A stretch of 63,485 nucleotides of DNA, filler included, from Octopus bimaculoides (taxonomy: Eukaryota): NCBI RefSeq assembly GCF_001194135.2. It is 12 parts of 11 records of this genome, joined end to end, with 100 filler letters (N's around TTAATTAATTAA, not from the genome) between each part and the next. Parts side by side here need not be neighbours in the genome. Positions count along the whole stretch, not along the records: positions 27,100 to 42,063 come from NC_068997.1; 11 more parts are not named here. One strand, written 5' to 3'. The position numbers were made by a program, and so were the translations under genes. How positions within the stretch are numbered: the first letter of the stretch is position 1; each line of letters begins with the position of its first letter. Below are positions 27,101 through 37,805 of the stretch, piece after piece. Below the pieces are notes generated by a model. It saw nothing but the letters and a program-made list of their open reading frames with translations. It did not search any database and was not told the origin of the DNA.

Positions 27101-27406
27101 GTATATATTTGATGATCTTTAGATTAACTCCTGTTTCTTTGATTCTTGCAGGTATATATTTGATGATCTTTAGATTAACTCCTGTTTCTTTGATTCTTGC
27201 AGGTATATATTTGATGATCTTTAGATTAACTCCTGTTTCTTTGATCCTTGCAGGTATATATTTGATGATCTTTAGATTAACTCATGTTTCTTTGATTCTT
27301 GCAGGTATATATTTGATGATCTTTAGATTAACTCATGTTTCTTTGATTCTTGCAGGTATATATTTGATGATCTTTAGATTAACTCCTGTTTCTTTGATCC
27401 TTGCAG
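27101..27406 (+). repeat. Six tandem 51-bp copies of the M3 exon's intron/exon junction (array abuts a gap, so it may be longer)
   Basis: Unit gtatatatttgatgatctttagattaactcctgtttctttgattcttgcag starts at 27101, 27152, 27203, 27254, 27305 and 27356. Two variable positions (cct/cat; gattc/gatcc). Confidence 0.95.
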
Positions 27407-27600
27407 GTATATATCTGTGTCTTGTCATGACTATGACCTCCGTATCAGTTATAATGGCAGTCATGGTCATTAATCTGTATAATCGAGGAATGAAAACTAG
27501 ACGAGCCCCAAAATGGCTTAGGAAACTGATTTTGGAGTTTGCCTCTAGTCCCCTAAAAATGAAACATGACATAGAACACCTCGCTAAAGTTATCACACTT
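27407..27600 (+). CDS. Internal exon of a Cys-loop ligand-gated ion channel (nAChR-like) subunit: M3 helix and start of the intracellular loop (MX helix)
   Basis: Acceptor ttgcag|G at 27406/27407 and donor CTT|gtaagt at 27600/27601; 194 nt, phase 1 to phase 0. Translates (G)IYLCLVMTMTSVSVIMAVMVINLYNRGMKTRRAPKWLRKLILEF..., matching the nAChR M3 plus P-x-W-L-R-K-L pattern. Confidence 0.9.
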
Positions 27601-28329
27601 GTAAGTGTAAAACTCTTCTTAACAAGTGCATGAAAATAGTTATTATTCTACTTACATGCATGTATACTTTTCTGTTATTTATTCTTTGCATTTCTCCCAC
27701 ATAGAAGTTGCCCTCAACAAAACAGAGCTTCTTTCTCAAAGAATTTAGTTTCACTCTACTAATAAATATAAATTCCTTCCAAATTTTTGCAAATTAGCAA
27801 CCTTGTAGAGTTTTAGAATCATCAGAACATCAAGTATTAGAAAAGCAATGTAAGCGTGTGCACGGACACTGGTATAGGCGCTACTATTTTAATCTTCAAA
27901 CTGGCTACTATGAAATACATATTTTGTGTTATCTCGGCTTCTACTCAAGCTAGAAATTTAATCGAGTGTGCTAATCCTAAGATTTGGGGATCAATGATTC
28001 CAATAAAGACATCTACATTGTACTCAGTATTATCGAAATCAACAAAGGTAAATCAAAAACCTATTTTGTTCACATTTCTGGTAGCTGCTTATTTCATGAC
28101 AAATACATATTGAATATCTTACTTTATAAATATAAGCTTATAAAGCAAGAAAGCAATCATTAGATTTCAGGCTAAATTATAAGTTCTAAACACAAGATTT
28201 ACTCGGTCCAAGTTGAGGAATATGATTTTACTAATATTCATCTCTATCCTGTCATTTTCGTCATTACTGTCCGCGTTATTTCTTCAGTTCTTTCACCATA
28301 AACAAAGACTGTGCTATGTCAGTTGTGTT

Positions 28330-29005
28330 TTCTACATAAAAACTTTAGTTTGTGCCGTAGGCTTTAAACTGACAAATGTCTAACTTGGCAATGGTCTGTG
28401 GTGCAGATGGAAACTTTGCTATGCTAGGTAATATCTTGCTGTTGCCATATTTGAATCGCTCGATCAGACGTTGTATATCACAACACGGTACTTTGGTATT
28501 ATACTCTACTTTGTACTCTTCAACTGTAGGAGACAACCTGCAGATTTTAGCCAGAGGTTTCCCCAAGTAGATACCTCTTTAAATCGGGAATACTTGTTAT
28601 AGGGAGGCTATTTAGTCAATATATCAAGCGTTCAAAGTTGGTCAATGCATCCTTCCCATCCAGCATTAGATCACCTTCCTCTGTTTTATAAGAGATGAGA
28701 GAATGCTTGCACCTCATATCTTCCGCCATTGCTTCATTCCGGTGAATGAGTGGAGTATTCGTTATGCGGCTGCATGCTCGCACTCCAACGCACTTGAGAT
28801 TGACTCAGTGACCGAAGCACAATACACACATTGAAGCGCATCAACAGCCAGAGCCAAGTATTTGAGCCGAAGTAAACTTATTAATGTATCTAATCTGTAC
28901 TAATCTGCTGTTTCTATCAGATAAGAGAGTAAAAAACATGGGAGCCGACATAGTTTTTCTATATGCTTGAAGTATAATCTAAATTTCCCTCAAATCACAC
29001 CCTAG

Positions 29006-29051
<46 letters not shown>

Positions 29052-29061
29052 NNNNNNNNNN

Positions 29062-29108
<47 letters not shown>

Positions 29109-29420
29109 GAAGTTCATTCTTGGTTTCTCGGTCACTTTTCTTCAGCTCTTGCATGTCCACGATGCACCATAGTCAAAGACGTTTGTATTTATCTGATTTA
29201 TAGCAAAGCAGTATTTTAGTGCCTCTTCAGCTTGCAGGTGGTAAACTTGATCCGAATGTATTGATGCTTCGATGAAGAACATGGTGGATGTAATTTGTAT
29301 TGGTTGAAACATTCGACCCGTTTCTCATATTTTCAGCCGCTCAATAAAAGTCATTGTTGATGAAGAACTGAAGCAGACGATCATTGGCAATAGCGATATA
29401 TTCTCAGTTTGTGTTTCTGT
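28330..29420 (-). mobile_element. Highly decayed RTE-like LINE reverse transcriptase remnant in the intron between the M3 and M4 exons
   Basis: The minus strand gives degenerate RT motifs in the expected order: NISLL...ERLK, DQVYHLQ, TNVFD-MVHR, SAPMFFTLL, LDGKDALTNF, SRFKEVSTWGNL, IQRLIERF. Many stops and frameshifts. Confidence 0.55.
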
Positions 29421-30055
29421 CAATTGCTAATTTTGTACTGACATCCTGACTTCATTCACTGGATTTGAGAAAATGAATATGAGGCTTCTCGGCGAAAAAC
29501 TTGTAGTGACTGGTTCACACAGGGCTACACCTATGTGAAACGAAGAATTCTCATGCAGTGGATGCACTTTAGATTGTGTTGTGTTGTAGCGGAAACTGAA
29601 TCGTGTTTAAATAATTAGAGAACAAGGTATACAAGTGGGTCCCTTATCTTTAAATTAGACATATTGAATGAAGAATTTACAGGTCGGGACTAAGATAGAT
29701 GTATAGACAACCTTTATATCACCGATAACTGGAAGGATAAAAATTGCTCAAAGTGAAGCAAGTGTTAAGATAGAAAGTCTAATGACAGACTCTGGATTAA
29801 AAATCTAATCTGCAAATTTTTCTGACCCAAAACTCACACGGTTAGTCTAATTATGTTTCTAAAGTAACTATCGGCCGAGACAATGATCATGCAGCTGTCT
29901 ACACAAATACCTCTGAAGACTCTACAAATAAAGTTTTACTACTTTCTAAGCCTTTTTGACGAAGACCATTAGGAACCACACTGTCTCCACAATACAAGCT
30001 AAATAGAGCCACGTAAATAGCTTAAGTCTGATTTCTTTTTCCTTCATCTTTACAG

Positions 30056-30079
30056 ATTTGTTCGCACACGTGTTTACAT
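30056..30079 (+). CDS. Candidate 24-nt in-frame cassette microexon (ICSHTCLH) in the receptor's cytoplasmic loop
   Basis: Branch-like ctgat (30028-30032), long pyrimidine tract and tacag acceptor; moderate donor CAT|gtatga; phase 0/0 fits both flanking exons. No expression evidence. Confidence 0.3.
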
Positions 30080-30932
30080 GTATGACTTCCTTTACATATT
30101 GATTTTTTTTTAATTAAAAAAAATTTAGAAATTTTAGTTGCCTAAATGCTGGGGTCTTTTGTACGATATACAGGAAATATTTTAAAAGTAATTTGCAACA
30201 GAAATTTTAACAGTATTGAAGATAACGTGAAAATTCATCTTTACCGTTTCTGATATTGTTTTGGTGAAGTGAAATTCCTCAAGACCGGGTTTGCTAAGTT
30301 ATATTTGTATGTGCTCTAGAGATAGCACAAAGAAATATGAAGTTATATTCTGGGTATAGAATCTAGAAATTATTTCTTTATTTCCCATGGCCATTCCCTT
30401 ATTTATTTTACAATTACTGATTATTCATGCTCGACAAATAGCACATTTTCTGTTCATTTTACACTTTATTCGAAGTGACAGTCTATGCTATGAAACGGAG
30501 AATGTAATGGGGGTTTCAAGAAAGATTCTTATAAGATTTCATTTATTATCAAATTTAACTTATTACCTTATCAGATTTAATTTATCGTATGAGATTGTTT
30601 AGGTGTCAAATAACCACTTACTTTTCTAACACTTGTTAACTTTCTATGTCTGCCTTATTTTTTATATCTACCTCTTTGTATCTACCATTCTTCTTGTTTG
30701 TCTGTTGGTCTCTCCCTCCCTCTCTCTCTCTCTCCCTCTCTTTCTCTCTTCCTCTCTCTCTCTCTCTCCCTCTCTTTCTCTCTTCCTCTCTCTCGTTTTT
30801 TTTTGTATCCTGCTTATTAACAATATATTTCTTTTCTTTGCTACTTTAAAGTACTTGAGTACTTTAAGGTTTTATCGTGCTTAAAAATACTAATACTAAT
30901 TGTATGTTTATTTACTTATTTATTTATTGCAG

Positions 30933-31526
30933 ACCGAAGAAAAAGAAGGTCTTTATACGTGCACAAAACACGGAAAAGATAAGAAACAAAATGGTACTAT
31001 CGGTTCAATTGCTGCTCAAAGAGAAAAACACCCTCGTTCTCTCTATGACGTTGGACGTGTACGTCATCGACGTTATACGAAAAGCGATATTGATACCACA
31101 GAACCACTAGAGCTCCAAAACGAAGACGAAGGTACGTGGCTAAGGGAGGAAGAAATAATTCCAGAAAATGCTCCACCCCAACCGGAAGTCTCTGACAAGT
31201 CTCCCGAATGCGAAAACAATAACCATTTTCCGCGCCAGATCTCAGTCAAAACAGAAAACGAAAAAAACATCGATTTTGAATGCAAACAAAATGACGAAAA
31301 ATGGCCGTGTGCTGTGTATCAGGCATTATTATCACGGAAGATTGTAGTGGCAGAATGGCAGCGGATAGCATGTGTTATTGATCGATTTCTGTTCTGGATT
31401 TATTTCATCTCCACCATCGTTGCTTACATTGTTATTCTAGTTATTATACCTGGTCAGCGACAAGATGCACGCGAAGAAGCTAGCCGAGCGCGTGGAAGCT
31501 CAGTTATTAACTCATCATTTACATGA
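30933..31526 (+). CDS. Terminal exon of the same nAChR-like subunit: M3-M4 cytoplasmic loop, M4 helix and C-terminal tail
   Basis: Acceptor tttattgcag|ACC at 30932/30933, phase 0, compatible with the preceding donor. 197 codons plus TGA. Contains EWQRIACVIDRFLFWIYFISTIVAYIVILVIIP, the typical EW..vA.viDR M4 signature. Confidence 0.9.
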   Translation, partial: TEEKEGLYTCTKHGKDKKQNGTIGSIAAQREKHPRSLYDVGRVRHRRYTKSDIDTTEPLELQNEDEGTWLREEEIIPENAPPQPEVSDKSPECENNNHFPRQISVKTENEKNIDFECKQNDEKWPCAVYQALLSRKIVVAEWQRIACVIDRFLFWIYFISTIVAYIVILVIIPGQRQDAREEASRARGSSVINSSFT

Positions 31527-31969
31527 ATCTAAAAGAAAATTTACTATTCAAAGATCGGCTGATAAATTCCTGAATGCCATAACGCATGGAATCACTTTCA
31601 TACATATCTCTACCAAACATACGATCCCTGTGAATATCAACAAATCAGAATCTCATATTTAGTTAAATATCTTCATAAGTCCAAACATTCATACAGAATA
31701 TGTGATATGCTCTCGAAGATTATGATATGCCTGACATCTGAATATATATATATATATATTCAGATCTCATATATACTGAATCTAGTACTTGTAACTATAC
31801 ACCCGCATCCACACGCACATATGGGATTGGGACGCTAATTGAATTTCACGCTCTGCTGCGATGTACTGCATATCTATTGCACGATGCAGAAATAACGACC
31901 AAATGTTCAGTTTAGATACATAAATTTACACGAACTAATGAGTTTGATCCTCTTCGTTCGATTATACAA

Positions 31970-32019
<50 letters not shown>

Positions 32020-32568
32020 CATAATTATTGGTTGAGTTGAATGAATTCACAGATTGAAATTCACAAATCATTTACTAACATATTGCACACTAAATTCAAT
32101 TTAAAACACAGAGATTTCCATATAACATTAAGGCGTCATAAAGGACATGAGTGAGTGTATCAGTCTTAATTTTGTTTTTGTAGCTGCGAGTTGTGAATGG
32201 CATTACAACCTCTGTTCTAATTAAGGATATAAATAAATGCACATGAAATATTGGAAAGATAGGCGTATGCAATGATAATGTAAGCGAACAACTAAATAGG
32301 TGAACGGAAAATAGACATACATGAAATATGGTGTAAAAATACACATCAAATAAACCATACCACCTATCATAGCAATATTATTACACATGTGATAACGTTA
32401 GCCACAAATGTGATGATAATAGTTTACAACAAAGAATGTAATATGCAAGATAGATATTTTATATCGTTGAGTAACAAAATATAGGCCCATGTAATTTTGT
32501 AAATACACACATACATAAAATATTCATTAAAAACCAACCCTTACCTAAGTATATTAAGACTTATTTAA

Positions 32569-32603
<35 letters not shown>

Positions 32604-33142
32604 TAAATACAGCATATATACATTGCAGATATGCATATTCTCTTAAGGATGTATATATTGTGCGCGTGTATATACTTATGCATGTAGTGTGGTGGTGGTG
32701 GTGGTGGTGGTGGTGGTGGTGGTGGGGGCTGATGTTTCGCAAGCAACTTTCGTCGATGTTAAACTTAGAAAATGTCAATAAATGACTGTTTGCTATTCCT
32801 GATTATTTCACACAACAAAAGTAATTTGTTTCATGACATCTTCCAGTCATTATCATCACCGTCGCTGTCGCCGTCGTCACCGTCATCATCATCATCATCA
32901 TCATCATCATTTCTGTTTCGTGGCTGTTTAAATCTACAACTCCTCGTTGACATTTACAAACAACTATTAAAATCAGTCTCATTGGTAAAACTGAAATAGT
33001 AATGGTCTTCCTTTGCACCAGGATTTTAAAATCTGTGATGTGCGTCTTGGTGATAATCTCTCTCTCTCTCTTTCTTCCACCTTCTCAGTCCTTTACTCCT
33101 TCTCCTTTTCTCTCTTATCGCACCCTTCTCCTGCACACAGAG

Positions 33143-33190
<48 letters not shown>

Positions 33191-33811
33191 ATACACACAC
33201 ACAATTAATACAAAGAAAAACTTTCACTGCGGTAACGAAAGATGTTCTGCATTATTTTTCTTTCGAAGTTGATAGACTTAAAACAGTATTATTTTTTGGA
33301 TGTGATTCGACTCAAACCATACGAGAGAAAACATCATCATCAGCTTCATCATCGTCGTCGTCGTCGTCATCATCATCTAACATATACGCTCAAGTATACA
33401 TAGAAACACACAAAGACACACGTTTTGTTTTCACACATATGCATATCAACTGCCGCACTTTCAAAGAGATTTACATCTTTCCTAATTTCTATTCACAAAT
33501 TTCAAAAGCTAGGCATCGCTATTTTTTCAGGTTTATATTTATTTATTTGCCGGTTTTCGCCTTTTACTCGTGGCCCATTTTATCGTTGCAATAATCCTGC
33601 TGTGGTAAACCGGGTCCTGGTTTATAGATATTTTTTATAGATATTCTTCAACTTCCAGCTTTTTTCCCCAAAACCATTCCTTTAAGCCGTCTAAGTTTGT
33701 GTAATAACACTAAGTTTTTCACATAAATCCTTGCTGCTATGTCCTGTCTATGACTAGAGTCGTCGCTGTTATATCTATCTATCTATCTATCTATGCAAAC
33801 ACACACATACA

Positions 33812-33855
<44 letters not shown>

Positions 33856-34699
33856 TATATGTGTTGTGTGAGCATGTATGTGTACATGCAAGTATGTATG
33901 CATGTATGCATGTATTCTCCTGCATAAGCGCTTAATCGAGATGATCTGTGGCAGATTGTTTTTTTCCTTCCTCGTTATATTTGATGCACCACTCTTAGCA
34001 TTGCATCTGCCTGTCTTTTCCTATGATTCCATTTCTATTTGGTAATTTTTGTAATAGCCAGTAATCGATTAATATTACAGCCGTTTGTGACATTTAGTCA
34101 TTAAACATTTATAATTACATGTCTTAGTTTTTCAGTAACTATCCGCACATTCATTCTAAAATGTTCGAATACTCGTTGATGGCTTTCTCTGCATGATTTA
34201 GTTTAATTTATTCATGATAAAACTTCACTTTCTCCAACTCAGATTGCTTCTTGTCCTCTGCATTTACACAATGGCTTACCTTTTTATCAATACTGAATAC
34301 CACATGCACATGTTCAGGGCAGATCAAATGTTTGAACACACGATTGTTTGCCACATACTCTTGCTACGTTTTAATTGTGATCTCAGCTAACCTTTCTCGG
34401 TCTACAATTCTCAATGAAACTATGTTTATATTATACATCTTTTGTCTATTGTTTTGGGAATGAGGTGTAAAAAGCAGAGGCAAATTCAGATAAATTGAGA
34501 CTAGGTTACTTACTTAAGATGTGGCATATCAAAGTTACAACTCATTGGTTTACTAAGATGTATTTTTTTTTTAGTATAGCTTTAATAGTTTTCGATGCAC
34601 TTAAATAATGAATGCAGTGGGTAGATCATCACCAGTGCAGTGGGAACTCGTTGAGCTCTAAAATGAAAATTACTGTTTAGTAATTACTGTTTAGAAAAT

Positions 34700-35100
34700 T
34701 ACTGTTTAGAACGAAATTATCATACAAGTAATATTCGTATTATTAATTTTATCTTCAGATTATATTTTCCCCAGGAAGATGTGTGGAACTCGAATTCAAT
34801 CGAAGCATTATCTGATGCCAAATGCAAAATCCTTTCTTGAACTAAAACTCTCCAGCTCACGAGATCATTGGGAAATGATCTCGTGAGCTGGAGACAATTT
34901 CGGTTCAGTCTGTTAGAATTTTCCAACCTACATTCAACATTGCTCAAACAGTTTATGAAGGTCGGCTTCTTAGGTTCAAAATGTAGAGCGATAGAACGAT
35001 TGTTGAATTAGTTAGGTAAATTGATATTCTGACATCGCTAACATAAAAGAGATGAATTTTACTGTACAAAATTATGGCGGCGTACAAAAATTATCCAGTG
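34700..35100 (-). mobile_element. Possible decayed hAT (Charlie/Buster-type) transposase fragment
   Basis: Minus strand VQERILHLASDNASIEFEF weakly resembles the EqLieL.sD..lk..F segment of Buster-type transposases. Recognition only. Confidence 0.3.
34849..34894. repeat. Perfect hairpin: 21-bp stem, GGGA loop
   Basis: tctccagctcacgagatcatt GGGA aatgatctcgtgagctggaga. Confidence 0.95.
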
Positions 35101-35311
35101 AAGAACGGCATTTCAGCTCGGTATTAAAGTGTTGCTTCTACAGTGACAAACCTTATAAAGAAGGTTGATACCCGAGATTTGGTACTATAATTGTCATAAT
35201 ATATTAAAAAGATGGTTTGTTCTTTAAATTTTTATCTATTTACTACTATGACTAGTGTAAGTAGAATTGGCAGAGGTTTGCCTGACTAAATAACTAAAAC
35301 AACGTCATATA

Positions 35312-35889
35312 CACAGACATGCAGGAGGTAAATAGACACCTTTAATTTTTGAAATCTTTTATTTGATATTAATTGGTTGAAGGAGAGGTTTTCTTCTAGC
35401 TGCTCGTCCACAATACCCAAGCTTATGCAGATATGTAACACACGTTCTTGGACTAACTTCTAGCTGTTTTGCAATGTCAGAAGCCTTCGAACGGGGTTCG
35501 TTTTCCACAATTCTCTTCAAACAGCGAAGCTTCCTTTACGAGGGCTCAGGTCGGCCTGGACGAGAATCTGTTGATTCTTTTCCTTGGCTTTTGAATTGCA
35601 CTATAATTCTATTAACAGTAGCAATAGGGATTTGAAGATTTTTGGCAATTTTTCGCTGGCTAAGACCAGCTCCAAATTGCCCAACAATACGACCTCTTTG
35701 AAAATCTGAAAGTTCTGCTGAATTTTTTGTGCGTGACATGGTTACTCTTCACAAATGTTTAATATAATGGCACCTGGAATGAAAAAGAATAATTACATTG
35801 TAAATTCTACACCGCTGGAAACATAATAAGACGCTTAAATCAGAAATTTTGAAAATTAAAGGTGTCTATTTATTACCTGCATGTCTGTG
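35312..35889 (-). mobile_element. Internally deleted Tc1/mariner DNA transposon with ~40-bp TIRs and TA target duplication
   Basis: Left TA|cacagacatgcaggaggtaaatagacacctttaatttt matches the reverse complement of the right end (catgtctgtg|TA). The minus strand encodes a Tc1-type HTH ([12 protein letters not shown]...[15 protein letters not shown]...GRP) and, after frameshifts, LHKLGYCGRAARRKPLL. No DDE domain. Confidence 0.88.
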
Positions 35890-35896
35890 TACATAT

Positions 35897-35975
<79 letters not shown>

Positions 35976-37397
35976 GATATTGGGACATGCTCTAGATGAA
36001 AGAAGATAAACTTCACCTGAAAATTGATAAGCCTCCAATCTTAGATGCTACCTATCCCCGATAGAAACCAGTTTTTCTGCTTTCTCTGAATCTTGTTTTC
36101 ATTAAATTGGAATACTCTTGTACTATTAACTTTCGTTATATTTTCATCATCTTTGTATGACTGCTTCTTGGAAACATTATTTATTCTTATACGACTTAAA
36201 TACGTGCTGGCATTCGTTTTTCTATAGTTTTCATCTTCACAGAAGAAAAAAGGGAAAATAACATTTACATACATATACACGAAAATATTATTCTCTCCTC
36301 TAAATTTTATTTTTTAACACATATATATATATATATAATATATAATTTTGGAGTAAGAGTTGACAAAATACCATCGGAGAAAATACCTTGCGGTGTTTAG
36401 TTCCGATTCGTTATGTTCTGTATTCAAATCTCGTCGAGGTCAAGTTTGGCTTTTATCTTTCTGGTGTCGTCGATGAAATAAAGTACCTGACAAGAATTAA
36501 GCACGATTCAATATTCCTATAGTTCTATAAAACATCCTTGTACAATTCCATGTGAATGGAATTGTAATTGAAGCAAAGATCTACCTTAGCTAGTCAAGTG
36601 AAAAGCGCATATTCACCAGAAATTGTTAAATATTTACTAGTTTTATTAAACTCACCATTACCTTTCGGAAATTAATGGAAGTGACTGACTACCGTTTATA
36701 TTTCTCCAATAACTCAGTCGGATGGTCGAAATTCTATCTTCATTGTTTCTGCGGCACTTTTGTAGTTAATATTTCAATTACCATGGTTTCATCACAATTG
36801 TCTGAAGTGCGTACAATTAATTTCATCATGATTAAGATGAGGAGGATGGTGATGCTGATGATTATCACCATCATCAACACCACCTTCTTTCTATTTCTTC
36901 TGCACCTTCTCTTTCTATTTTTTCTTCCTCGTTTTCATCATCATCATTATCATCATCATGACACCTATTGTTCCTATTTTATTGTTTTCACATATTCAAA
37001 AATAAATTACATAAAATTTCAGATATATAAAAAAAAGAATAGATGAAGTTTCTAATTCTGACATTTTAAAACCTAGTTTATTCTAAAATACATCGTAATA
37101 AATGCTAATTTCTTGCCATGTGACAGCAATTACAGTAAACGAACATCACCAGACAGGATTATAGAAAAGCATTTGTGTGAAGTCGAATAATAAGTAAATC
37201 ACTGTTACCAGAAGGAGAGTTCCTTGGCTCGAATTAGTAAAAGAAAGAAAATAAATCTCAGATATCCAGAGAGCAAGCAATAACGAACTGAAATTGAAAT
37301 AATATATATATAAACTTTAAATATTTTCTGTCTGATATCGTCAAATACATTTTATTGAAATATATTTTGATAACTGACACACAATAAGAAATAAGCC

Positions 37398-37449
<52 letters not shown>

Positions 37450-37805
37450 CCTATGGAATTTTATGATTTAGTGCGACCATTAGATAGATAATAAGAAGCC
37501 AGATATAGTGTTAATTGAGAAAGAAAGCAAACGATGCTGGATCATAGATATAGCATGCTCCGCTGACAATAAGGGATGCGATAAGGAAGAAAGAAAAGTC
37601 GATAGATACAACAGGTTAACTTGGGAGATTAAGCAGTTGTGGTCGCTGAAAAAGGTGGTAGTAGTAAAATTAATTGTCGGGGCCCTGGAACCGCTCGAAT
37701 ACTCCGGATGGTGCTCACAAAATAAGGGGTGTTACCTTAGTTCACTGGTAGTGAACAGCCGACACCGTAGTAAATCTCCAGCGTTACAAAAATTGTGCAA
37801 AGACA
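37450..37805 (+). mobile_element. 5'-truncated R4/Dong-like non-LTR retrotransposon (restriction-like endonuclease domain plus 3' end)
   Basis: LWNFMI*CDH*IDNKKPDIVLIEKESKRCWIIDIACSAD...KVDRY..L..EIKQLW...VVGAL-like segment matches the PD...D RLE domain of R4-clade elements. Flanked by (TAA)n on both sides. Confidence 0.8.

What the first reader, a model, noticed from the sequence alone, without database searches (positions are those of the whole stretch)
27101..27406. Tandem array of six complete, in-frame 3' splice sites in front of the M3 exon: a potential 17-residue ratchet in a neurotransmitter receptor
Seen: each 51-nt unit contains a YTRAY branch motif (TTAAC, A 24 nt before the junction), a pyrimidine tract and CAG. 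It is 17 codons long, stop-free in the exon's frame, and encodes hydrophobic GIYLMIFRLT(P/H)VSLILA. Using acceptor k instead of the last would insert 17, 34, 51, 68 or 85 aa (more if the array extends into the gap) at the M2-M3 linker/M3 start. Established: this linker couples ligand binding to gating in Cys-loop receptors. Inference: the array could yield a graded isoform series (altered gating, extra membrane segment, dominant-negative subunits) that escapes NMD. I know of no described case at this scale, but cannot search.
Basis: partly seen in the sequence, partly recalled or inferred. Interest (0 to 1): 0.8.

Follow-up and report, generated by a model that had tools for sequence, protein, structure and literature searches.

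The report
Repeated splice acceptor before receptor exon
A 51-base stretch spanning the intron/exon border of a mollusc-type acetylcholine-receptor gene has been copied head to tail at least six times in this lineage only, so the exon is preceded by a row of identical splice acceptors; it is most likely a young, functionless minisatellite, though a useful natural test of how acceptors are chosen.

Summary
A 51-nt unit is repeated 6.2 times at 27100-27414, 98% alike. Each unit has a TTAAC branch motif, a pyrimidine tract and CAG, is 17 codons long, and is open only in the exon's frame. The exon is M3 of an alpha7/alpha10-like nicotinic receptor subunit.

New here: the closest relative's contig (L005, synonymous divergence 0.14) has one copy of the same junction. 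The unit is therefore the last 42 nt of the intron plus the first 9 nt of the exon. More distant relatives also have one acceptor, and two relatives' transcripts join M2 to M3 without an insert. The array is thus young and lineage-specific. The open frame is inherited from the ancestral intron end, and the gene is under strong purifying selection (pN/pS about 0.05).

The array starts at the first base of a short-read scaffold, so its copy number is uncertain.

The mirror image is known: a 37-bp VNTR in human F7 intron 7 gives five to nine identical donor sites, and only the exon-proximal one is used.

No evidence supports a graded isoform series, and none excludes leaky use of upstream acceptors. 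Each junction (CAG|GTATAT) also resembles a recursive splice site.

Verdict: a real feature, probably neutral or slightly harmful, of modest interest.

The parts
27100..27405 (+). Six 51-nt units of the junction-spanning minisatellite: 27100-27150, 27151-27201, 27202-27252, 27253-27303, 27304-27354 and 27355-27405. The array is cut on the left by the scaffold edge. Variant bases at unit positions 32 and 45 give the pattern CT, CT, CC, AT, AT, CC, which is a 153-nt higher-order period.
27406..27414 (+). Partial seventh copy (GGTATATAT): the G of the authentic AG plus the first 8 nt of the exon. This is the stretch that each unit carries at its 5' end.
27150..27355 (+). Span holding the five upstream pseudo-acceptor AGs (27150-51, 27201-02, 27252-53, 27303-04, 27354-55). 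Using them would add 85, 68, 51, 34 or 17 codons and lengthen the exon to 449-245 nt.
27124..27383 (+). Span holding the six TTAAC branch-point candidates. The branch A lies at 27127, 27178, 27229, 27280, 27331 and 27382, each 24 nt before the G of its AG. The motif is conserved in the single-copy relative L005.
27405..27406 (+). Authentic acceptor AG. It is a phase 1 intron at the conserved position PLI-G|IY.
27407..27600 (+). M3 exon (194 nt) of the nicotinic receptor subunit: (G)IYLCLVMTMTSVSVIMAVMVINLYNRGMKTRRAPKWLRKLILEFASSPLKMKHDIEHLAKVITL.
27601..27606 (+). Donor GTAAGT of the M3 exon.
30933..31526 (+). Last exon: cytoplasmic loop, M4 (EWQRIACVIDRFLFWIYFISTIVAYIVILV) and the stop codon. 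Its acceptor is ttattgcag|ACC. The junction ITL|TEEKEG matches the relatives' transcripts.

Best explanation
The array is a young minisatellite specific to this lineage. A 51-bp segment spanning the boundary between the M2-M3 intron and the M3 exon was duplicated in tandem. The segment is the last 42 nt of the intron (branch motif, pyrimidine tract and AG) plus the first 9 nt of the exon. It was then amplified by slippage or unequal exchange, partly in three-unit blocks. The gene encodes an alpha7/alpha10-like nicotinic acetylcholine receptor subunit of a mollusc-type animal.

The result is at least five upstream pseudo-acceptors, each with sequence almost identical to the authentic one (at most one base differs) from -42 to +9.

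The most likely outcome (inferred) is that the array is removed as part of the intron. The exon-proximal acceptor at 27405-06 gives the conserved protein, because only that acceptor lies next to the real exon's sequence and within normal exon length of the strong GTAAGT donor. The upstream copies are silent or minor sites.

If an upstream copy is used, the in-frame 17-codon steps would put hydrophobic inserts at the start of M3. These would probably be non-functional. Alternatively the CAG|GTATAT junctions could allow re-splicing to the last acceptor.

The structure, origin and age are shown. The splicing outcome is inferred.
For: - Array and unit structure.
- Single-copy homologous junction in the closest relative L005...gtgatctttaaattaacttctgtttctttgattattgcag|GTATATATCTG. 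Unit positions 10-51 are therefore ancestral intron and positions 1-9 are exon.
- L001-L004 and P0011-P0018 each have one acceptor at the same codon position.
- Window against L005 over 262 codons: pS 0.138, pN 0.0065. All 10 differences in the M3 exon are synonymous. They are different species and the gene is constrained.
- Transcript-derived proteins of relatives read ...SEAVPLIG(V/I)YLCVVMTMTS... with no insert.
- The M2-exon donors of L001 and L007 end ...PLI + G|GTAAG, which is phase 1.
- The L005 intron end is already open in the exon frame for 19 codons.
- Every donor read as DNA in this gene family (window and L005 M3 exons, L001 and L007 M2 exons) is GTAAG, so GTATAT is off-consensus and probably weak.
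- Precedent: among the 5-9 identical donors of the F7 intron 7 VNTR, only the exon-proximal one is used (PMC1557585).
Against: - No RNA data exist for this species, so which acceptor is used is unknown.
- Classic experiments with duplicated acceptors gave contradictory results. The F7 paper's discussion reports use of only the proximal copy in gamma-globin constructs and the opposite in another study.
- All six sites are intrinsically nearly equivalent, so stochastic use of upstream sites is plausible.
- The array touches the scaffold edge, so its copy number and upstream context are unseen.
- Upstream exons of the gene are not in the piece, so the integrity of the whole gene is not shown.
Confidence: 0.7

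Rival explanations
1. One reading: the array is a working device. Regulated choice among the tandem acceptors yields a graded series of receptor isoforms with 17, 34... 85 extra residues at the M2-M3 linker or M3 start.
For: All copies carry an intact branch motif, pyrimidine tract and AG. The unit is 3n and open only in the exon's frame, so products would escape nonsense-mediated decay.
Against: - The array is absent from the sister species and from all other relatives sampled.
- The units are 96-100% identical, so the array is recent.
- The open frame is inherited, not acquired.
- M3 is identical in protein between the two species and pN/pS is about 0.05. A 17-residue hydrophobic insert at the start of a membrane helix would be expected to disrupt the fold (inference).
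- No insert-bearing protein was found among 5.8 billion.
- In the F7 precedent the extra sites are silent.
Confidence: 0.07
2. Leaky, non-adaptive use: upstream acceptors are used at a low stochastic rate. This gives either in-frame aberrant subunits, or normal mRNA after a second splice from a regenerated or internal G|GTATAT donor to the last acceptor (recursive-type resolution).
For: The sites are near-identical from -42 to +9. Each junction is YnCAG|GTATAT, a juxtaposed 3'/5' splice site like a ratchet point (definitions in 10.1101/006163 and PMC8605326). Each unit read from GT to AG has every element of a small intron.
Against: GTATAT departs from the GTAAG seen at every donor sampled in this gene family. 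A 51-nt intron is very short. Known ratchet points are conserved and lie in long introns, whereas here there is no conservation. There are no RNA data.
Confidence: 0.2
3. Assembly artefact: the repeat, or most of its copies, was produced by a short-read assembler looping at a scaffold end.
For: The array starts at base 1 of the piece. The piece has N gaps (29052-29061, 39523-40497). Its other end also lies in a tandem repeat, (TGTA)n at 41987-42063.
Against: The unit-to-unit junction ...CTTGCAG|GTATATATTTGATGATC... does not exist in a single-copy locus, so at least two copies must be present in the reads. There are three unit variants in an ordered CT,CT,CC | AT,AT,CC pattern. An assembly that breaks inside the array suggests an array longer than the reads, not shorter.
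Confidence: 0.06
4. The gene copy on this scaffold is a dead duplicate, so the array has no consequence.
For: Upstream exons are not visible in the piece. No transcript of this gene from this or the sister species was found.
Against: Both visible exons are intact with good splice sites and a stop codon. pN/pS is about 0.05 against L005 over 262 codons.
Confidence: 0.05

Closest known systems
Human F7 (coagulation factor VII) intron 7 37-bp VNTR (Borensztajn et al. 2006, PMC1557585)
   Same: It is a minisatellite whose terminal unit spans an exon/intron boundary, so one authentic splice site is accompanied by several sequence-identical pseudo-sites in tandem (5-9 there, at least 6 here). It serves as a natural model of splice-site choice.
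   Different: The F7 array multiplies the donor (5' splice site) on the intron side downstream of the exon. This one multiplies the acceptor with its own branch motif and pyrimidine tract, upstream of the exon. The F7 unit is 37 bp and not 3n; this unit is 51 bp and in frame. Site usage is measured in F7 and unknown here.
Experimental tandem duplications of acceptor sites in globin genes (Lang & Spritz 1983; Kuhne et al. 1983, as summarised in PMC1557585)
   Same: Identical 3' splice sites compete in cis for one donor.
   Different: Those were two engineered copies in mammalian genes with short introns, and the outcomes were contradictory. Here there are at least six natural copies at the end of an intron that is about 4.6 kb in a relative.
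Recursive splice sites / ratchet points (Drosophila Ubx, kuz, Bx; 10.1101/006163, PMC8605326)
   Same: A 3' splice site is juxtaposed with a GT-starting sequence (YnCAG|GT...), so that splicing to it recreates a donor.
   Different: Ratchet points have a near-consensus donor (GTAAGA/GTAAGT), are conserved and sit singly in very long introns. Here the donor half is GTATAT, the sites are not conserved, and they are 51 nt apart at the end of the intron.
NAGNAG and other short-distance tandem acceptors
   Same: Alternative acceptors give in-frame insertions or deletions.
   Different: Those sites share one branch point and pyrimidine tract and lie 3-12 nt apart (own knowledge). Here each acceptor has its own branch motif and tract at 51-nt spacing.
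Introns and alternative splicing arising from tandem duplication of AGGT-containing segments or tandem arrays (Hellsten et al. 2011, PMC3265369; Zhuo et al. 2007, title seen, content from memory)
   Same: Duplicating a segment that contains AG|GT multiplies usable splice signals. Each unit from GT to AG looks like a small intron.
   Different: Those cases create a new intron inside former exon sequence. Here the duplication sits at the end of an existing, conserved intron, and the intron position in the protein is unchanged.

Membership tests
Nicotinic-type Cys-loop receptor subunit gene (pentameric ligand-gated ion channel) | Transmembrane region matching Pfam Neur_chan_memb above its curated cut-off | tested here: met
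   The M3 exon joined to the last exon scores 42.8 bits against a cut-off of 28.1 (E 9.6e-11).
Nicotinic-type Cys-loop receptor subunit gene (pentameric ligand-gated ion channel) | Ligand-binding domain with Cys-loop, and vicinal cysteines for alpha-type subunits | tested here: inconclusive
   This part is not in the piece. The orthologous exon in relative L001 has ...SSCKVDITYFPFDDQQC... and ...HSCCPDPHPD.... The best solved relatives are human alpha7 chains (E 6e-59).
Nicotinic-type Cys-loop receptor subunit gene (pentameric ligand-gated ion channel) | Exon junctions confirmed by relatives' transcripts and gene structures | tested here: met
   P0004 and P0005 read PLIG(V/I)YLCVV and (S/T)L|E(E/D)E(R/Q)EG. 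In L001-L005 the exon starts at the same codon. The M2 donors are phase 1.
Junction-spanning minisatellite giving tandem identical splice sites (F7 intron 7 type) | Head-to-tail repeat of a 10-100 bp unit with high identity | tested here: met
   51 nt, 6.2 copies, 98% matches.
Junction-spanning minisatellite giving tandem identical splice sites (F7 intron 7 type) | The terminal unit contains the authentic exon/intron boundary, and every unit keeps the splice consensus | tested here: met
   The unit is the last 42 intron nt plus 9 exon nt, shown by alignment to single-copy L005. All six copies keep TTAAC, the pyrimidine tract and CAG.
Junction-spanning minisatellite giving tandem identical splice sites (F7 intron 7 type) | Copy number varies between individuals (VNTR) | not testable with these tools
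   Only one assembly of this species is at hand, and its ORFs are not on record elsewhere.
Junction-spanning minisatellite giving tandem identical splice sites (F7 intron 7 type) | Only the exon-proximal site is used | not testable with these tools
   No RNA evidence for this gene in this species.
Recursive splice site (ratchet point) | A 3' splice site juxtaposed with a consensus 5' splice site (CAG|GTAAGT-like) | tested here: inconclusive
   The junction is TTGCAG|GTATAT. The acceptor half is good. The donor half departs at +4 and +5 from the GTAAG seen at every donor sampled in this gene family.
Recursive splice site (ratchet point) | Conservation between species | tested here: not met
   There are no upstream copies in L005 or L001-L004.
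NAGNAG / short-distance tandem acceptors | Acceptors a few nucleotides apart that share one branch point and pyrimidine tract | tested here: not met
   The spacing is 51 nt and each acceptor has its own TTAAC and tract.

The most novel reading that the evidence does not exclude
The array is a natural acceptor-side counterpart of the F7 donor VNTR in which upstream acceptors really are used. Usage could be stochastic or tissue-regulated, giving a ladder of in-frame receptor isoforms. Or the upstream sites could act as stepwise (recursive) landing sites that are re-spliced to the last acceptor. Copy number would vary between individuals and tune the ratio.
Probability: 0.12. Interest if true: 0.65.

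Novelty: new variant of a known kind. Interest (0 to 1): 0.3.

Why it matters
If the array is real at this copy number, nature has supplied six or more acceptors that are nearly identical from -42 to +9 (at most one base differs) and otherwise differ only in position and downstream context.

That is the acceptor-side equivalent of the F7 intron 7 model, which was used to argue for directional scanning in donor choice. It could test three ideas directly: exon definition, proximity, and first-come-first-served models of 3' splice-site selection.

For the animal it is probably neutral or mildly harmful. It tells us little about receptor physiology unless insert isoforms are found.

Tried and rejected
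1. I first thought the unit was a diverged copy of the first 17-18 codons of the M3 exon (GIYL...TPVSLILA against GIYL...TSVSVIMA).
   - A protein-level shuffle gave p = 0.0004, but the nucleotide level gave p = 0.3.
   - The single-copy relative shows that unit positions 10-51 are simply the ancestral intron end, so this idea is rejected for the present array.
   - A weaker hint of an older 54-nt duplication remains: 22 of 34 nt in L005, p about 0.01-0.02. A negative control (L002) reaches the same p, so it is unresolved.

2. Breakpoint microhomology TGTG(A)TCTT at both ends of the duplicated segment in L005 is not unusual. About 40% of positions with the same geometry score as well.

3. I looked for array-bearing ORFs or insert-bearing transcripts among 5.8 billion proteins and found none.

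4. The window's own ORFs were looked up in the contig collection and are not on record.

5. Naming the organisms through run accessions in the literature failed.

6. Rfam gave no hit on the whole piece.

7. The RNA fold of the array has z = -4.2, but the ensemble is diffuse (minimum-energy structure frequency 0.0001) and the score is inflated by the self-complementary UAUAUA in each unit. I did not use it.

8. Literature searches found no natural acceptor-side junction array. The library is incomplete, so this is not proof of absence.

9. Kuhne et al. 1983 and Zhuo et al. 2007 could not be read.

Full report
**Observation**

The piece (27100-42063) opens with a 51-nt tandem repeat. Tandem Repeats Finder gives 6.2 copies, 98% matches, no indels and score 602 at 27100-27414. 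A 43-nt core of the unit occurs six times with at most one mismatch, against none expected in shuffles.

The six full units differ only at unit positions 32 (C/A) and 45 (T/C). The order is CT, CT, CC, AT, AT, CC, so units 1-3 and 4-6 form a 153-nt higher-order repeat that is 99% identical.

Each unit holds TTAAC, with its second A 24 nt before the G of a CAG. Each has 12-13 pyrimidines in the 16 positions upstream of the AG.

The unit reads GIYLMIFRLT(P/H)VSLILA in the exon's frame. It has four stops in the second frame and one in the third.

- The array starts at the first base of the piece and is cut by the scaffold edge.
- It runs 9 nt into the exon.
- Each unit also has an out-of-frame TTTAG.
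- The intron is phase 1.

**What the exon is**

The exon at 27407-27600 ends at a GTAAGT donor. Together with 30933-31526 it encodes M3, the cytoplasmic loop and M4 of a Cys-loop receptor. It matches Pfam Neur_chan_memb at 42.8 bits against a cut-off of 28.1.

A transcript-derived relative (P0005) aligns best with solved human alpha7 nicotinic receptors (E about 6e-59). The junction falls at PLI(A/G)|(Q/I)Y, the start of M3.

Named relatives are molluscan. Sinanodonta woodiana and Lottia gigantea proteins are 76% identical, and other hits are labelled alpha-10-like. The orthologous upstream exon in relative L001 carries the vicinal cysteines of alpha-type subunits.

Both junctions of the M3 exon are confirmed by relatives' transcripts, which read ...SEAVPLIG(V/I)YLCVVMTMTS... 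and ...(S/T)L|E(E/D)E(R/Q)EG.... They are also confirmed by the phase-1 donors of the M2 exon in L001 and L007.

**Origin of the array**

The most informative result is contig L005 (Logan, SRR11869391). Its M3 exon is 95% identical in nucleotides and its introns are 72-83% identical.

L005 has one copy of the junction...ggaatgttttttttgtgatctttaaattaacttctgtttctttgattattgcag|GTATATATCTGTG.

Aligned with the window's units (alignment A1):
- Unit positions 10-51 are the ancestral last 42 nt of the intron, including the TTAAC motif.
- Unit positions 1-9 are the G of the AG plus the first 8 nt of the exon.

More distant relatives (L001-L004, 81% exon identity) and further homologues (P0011-P0018) each have a single acceptor at the same codon, with unrelated intron ends.

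The array therefore arose after the split from the L005 lineage. Over 262 codons that split shows pS = 0.138 and pN = 0.0065, and all ten differences in the M3 exon are synonymous. So the two are different species, and the gene is under strong purifying selection.

The open reading frame of the unit is not a special property. The single-copy intron end of L005 is already open in the exon frame for 19 codons (...IWNVFFVIFKLTSVSLIIA|GIY). Only the unit length being a multiple of three needs chance, which is 1 in 3.

**Is it an assembly artefact?**

The piece has N gaps and both of its ends lie in tandem repeats. It looks like a small short-read scaffold that broke inside the array, so the copy number cannot be trusted.

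Two points argue against a wholly artefactual array:
- The unit-to-unit junction (…CTTGCAG|GTATATATTTGATGATC…) cannot exist in a single-copy locus.
- The three unit variants occur in an ordered pattern.

No other assembly of this species could be found.

**How it most likely behaves**

This section is inference. All six acceptors are nearly identical from -42 to +9 (at most one base differs), so choice must depend on position and on what follows.

Only the last acceptor is followed by real exon sequence, and it gives a 194-nt exon ending at a strong GTAAGT donor. Upstream sites would give exons of 245-449 nt made partly of intron-derived repeat. In a relative the intron is about 4.6 kb, which favours exon-definition pairing of the donor with the nearest acceptor.

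The closest precedent is the human F7 intron 7 VNTR. There a 37-bp minisatellite spans the exon 7 donor and yields five to nine identical donors. Only the exon-proximal one is used, although the others are functional when tested (PMC1557585).

I therefore expect the array to be removed with the intron, and the upstream copies to be silent or minor.

The same paper notes that engineered duplicated acceptors in globin genes gave contradictory results, so leaky use cannot be excluded.

If an upstream site is used, there are two possible results:
- In-frame hydrophobic inserts at the start of M3. Given the conservation of this segment, they are probably non-functional.
- A second splice. Every junction is CAG|GTATAT, a juxtaposed acceptor and donor like a recursive splice site (10.1101/006163, PMC8605326), and each unit from GT to AG has the parts of a tiny intron. 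However, GTATAT departs from the GTAAG found at every donor sampled in this gene family, and the sites are not conserved.

**Comparison and novelty**

The kind is known: a junction-spanning minisatellite that multiplies a splice site. This one is on the acceptor side, with a complete branch motif and tract per copy, and it is in frame.

I found no natural acceptor-side example in the literature searches, but the library is incomplete. I rate it a new variant of a known kind.

It has modest interest as a natural model for 3' splice-site choice. It has low interest for receptor biology unless RNA data show insert isoforms.

**Unresolved**

The last 34 nt or so of the intron, read in the exon's frame, resemble the exon 54 nt downstream: L005 has LTSVSLIIA against MTSVSVIMA, 22 of 34 nt, p about 0.01-0.02. 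A control pair reaches the same level. If the resemblance is real, an earlier duplication of the exon start was absorbed into the intron by the same process.

Noticed in passing
window 27364-27405 against 27433-27460; L005 290-323 against 343-376: Read in the exon's frame, the intron end resembles the M3 exon exactly 18 codons downstream (L005 ...LTSVSLIIA| against ...MTSVSVIMA). This may be the trace of an older 54-nt duplication of the exon start that became intronic. Significance is weak (p about 0.01-0.02) and a control pair scores the same.
   Followed up: partly
window 27121-27122 and every 51 nt to 27376-27377: Each unit has a second AG (TTTAG) upstream of its branch motif. It would be out of frame. 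The single-copy relative has TTTAA here, so this AG is derived in the window's lineage.
   Followed up: partly
window 27100-27480: The array RNA folds better than shuffles (-94.7 against -73.8 kcal/mol, z = -4.2), through pairing between units around the self-complementary UAUAUA. The ensemble is diffuse, so the meaning is unclear.
   Followed up: no
window 35359-35739, minus strand: Two adjacent ORFs match the DNA-binding helix-turn-helix domains of Tc1/mariner transposases (HTH_Tnp_Tc3_2 at 37.5 bits against a cut-off of 31.5; HTH_SB at 34.8 bits, below its cut-off). They are interrupted by a stop and no catalytic domain follows, so this is a decayed transposon remnant.
   Followed up: partly
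window 29052-29061, 39523-40497, 41987-42063: Two N gaps flanked by (TC)n/(CT)n and (AT)n runs, and a (TGTA)n run at the right end of the piece. With the array at the left end, both scaffold ends lie in tandem repeats, which is typical of a short-read draft.
   Followed up: yes
window 28885-41991: The region downstream of the gene is packed with microsatellites: (TC)49, (AC)31, (AT)60, (GTG)12, (TAA)17, (TCA)n and (CAT)n. GC content of the piece is 33%.
   Followed up: no
window 37508-37897, plus strand: A 129-aa ORF (…WIIDIACSADNKGCDKEERKVDRYNRLTWEIKQLW…VGALE…) recalls, from memory, the C-terminal tail of non-LTR retrotransposon ORF2 proteins. It has no Pfam match.
   Followed up: partly
L001 5690-5760 and 10298: In the 68.7-kb relative contig, the M2 exon donor (ATAG|GTAAGA) is followed at once by a long (TA)n run. 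The M2-M3 intron is about 4.6 kb. One large exon covers the Cys-loop through M2.
   Followed up: partly
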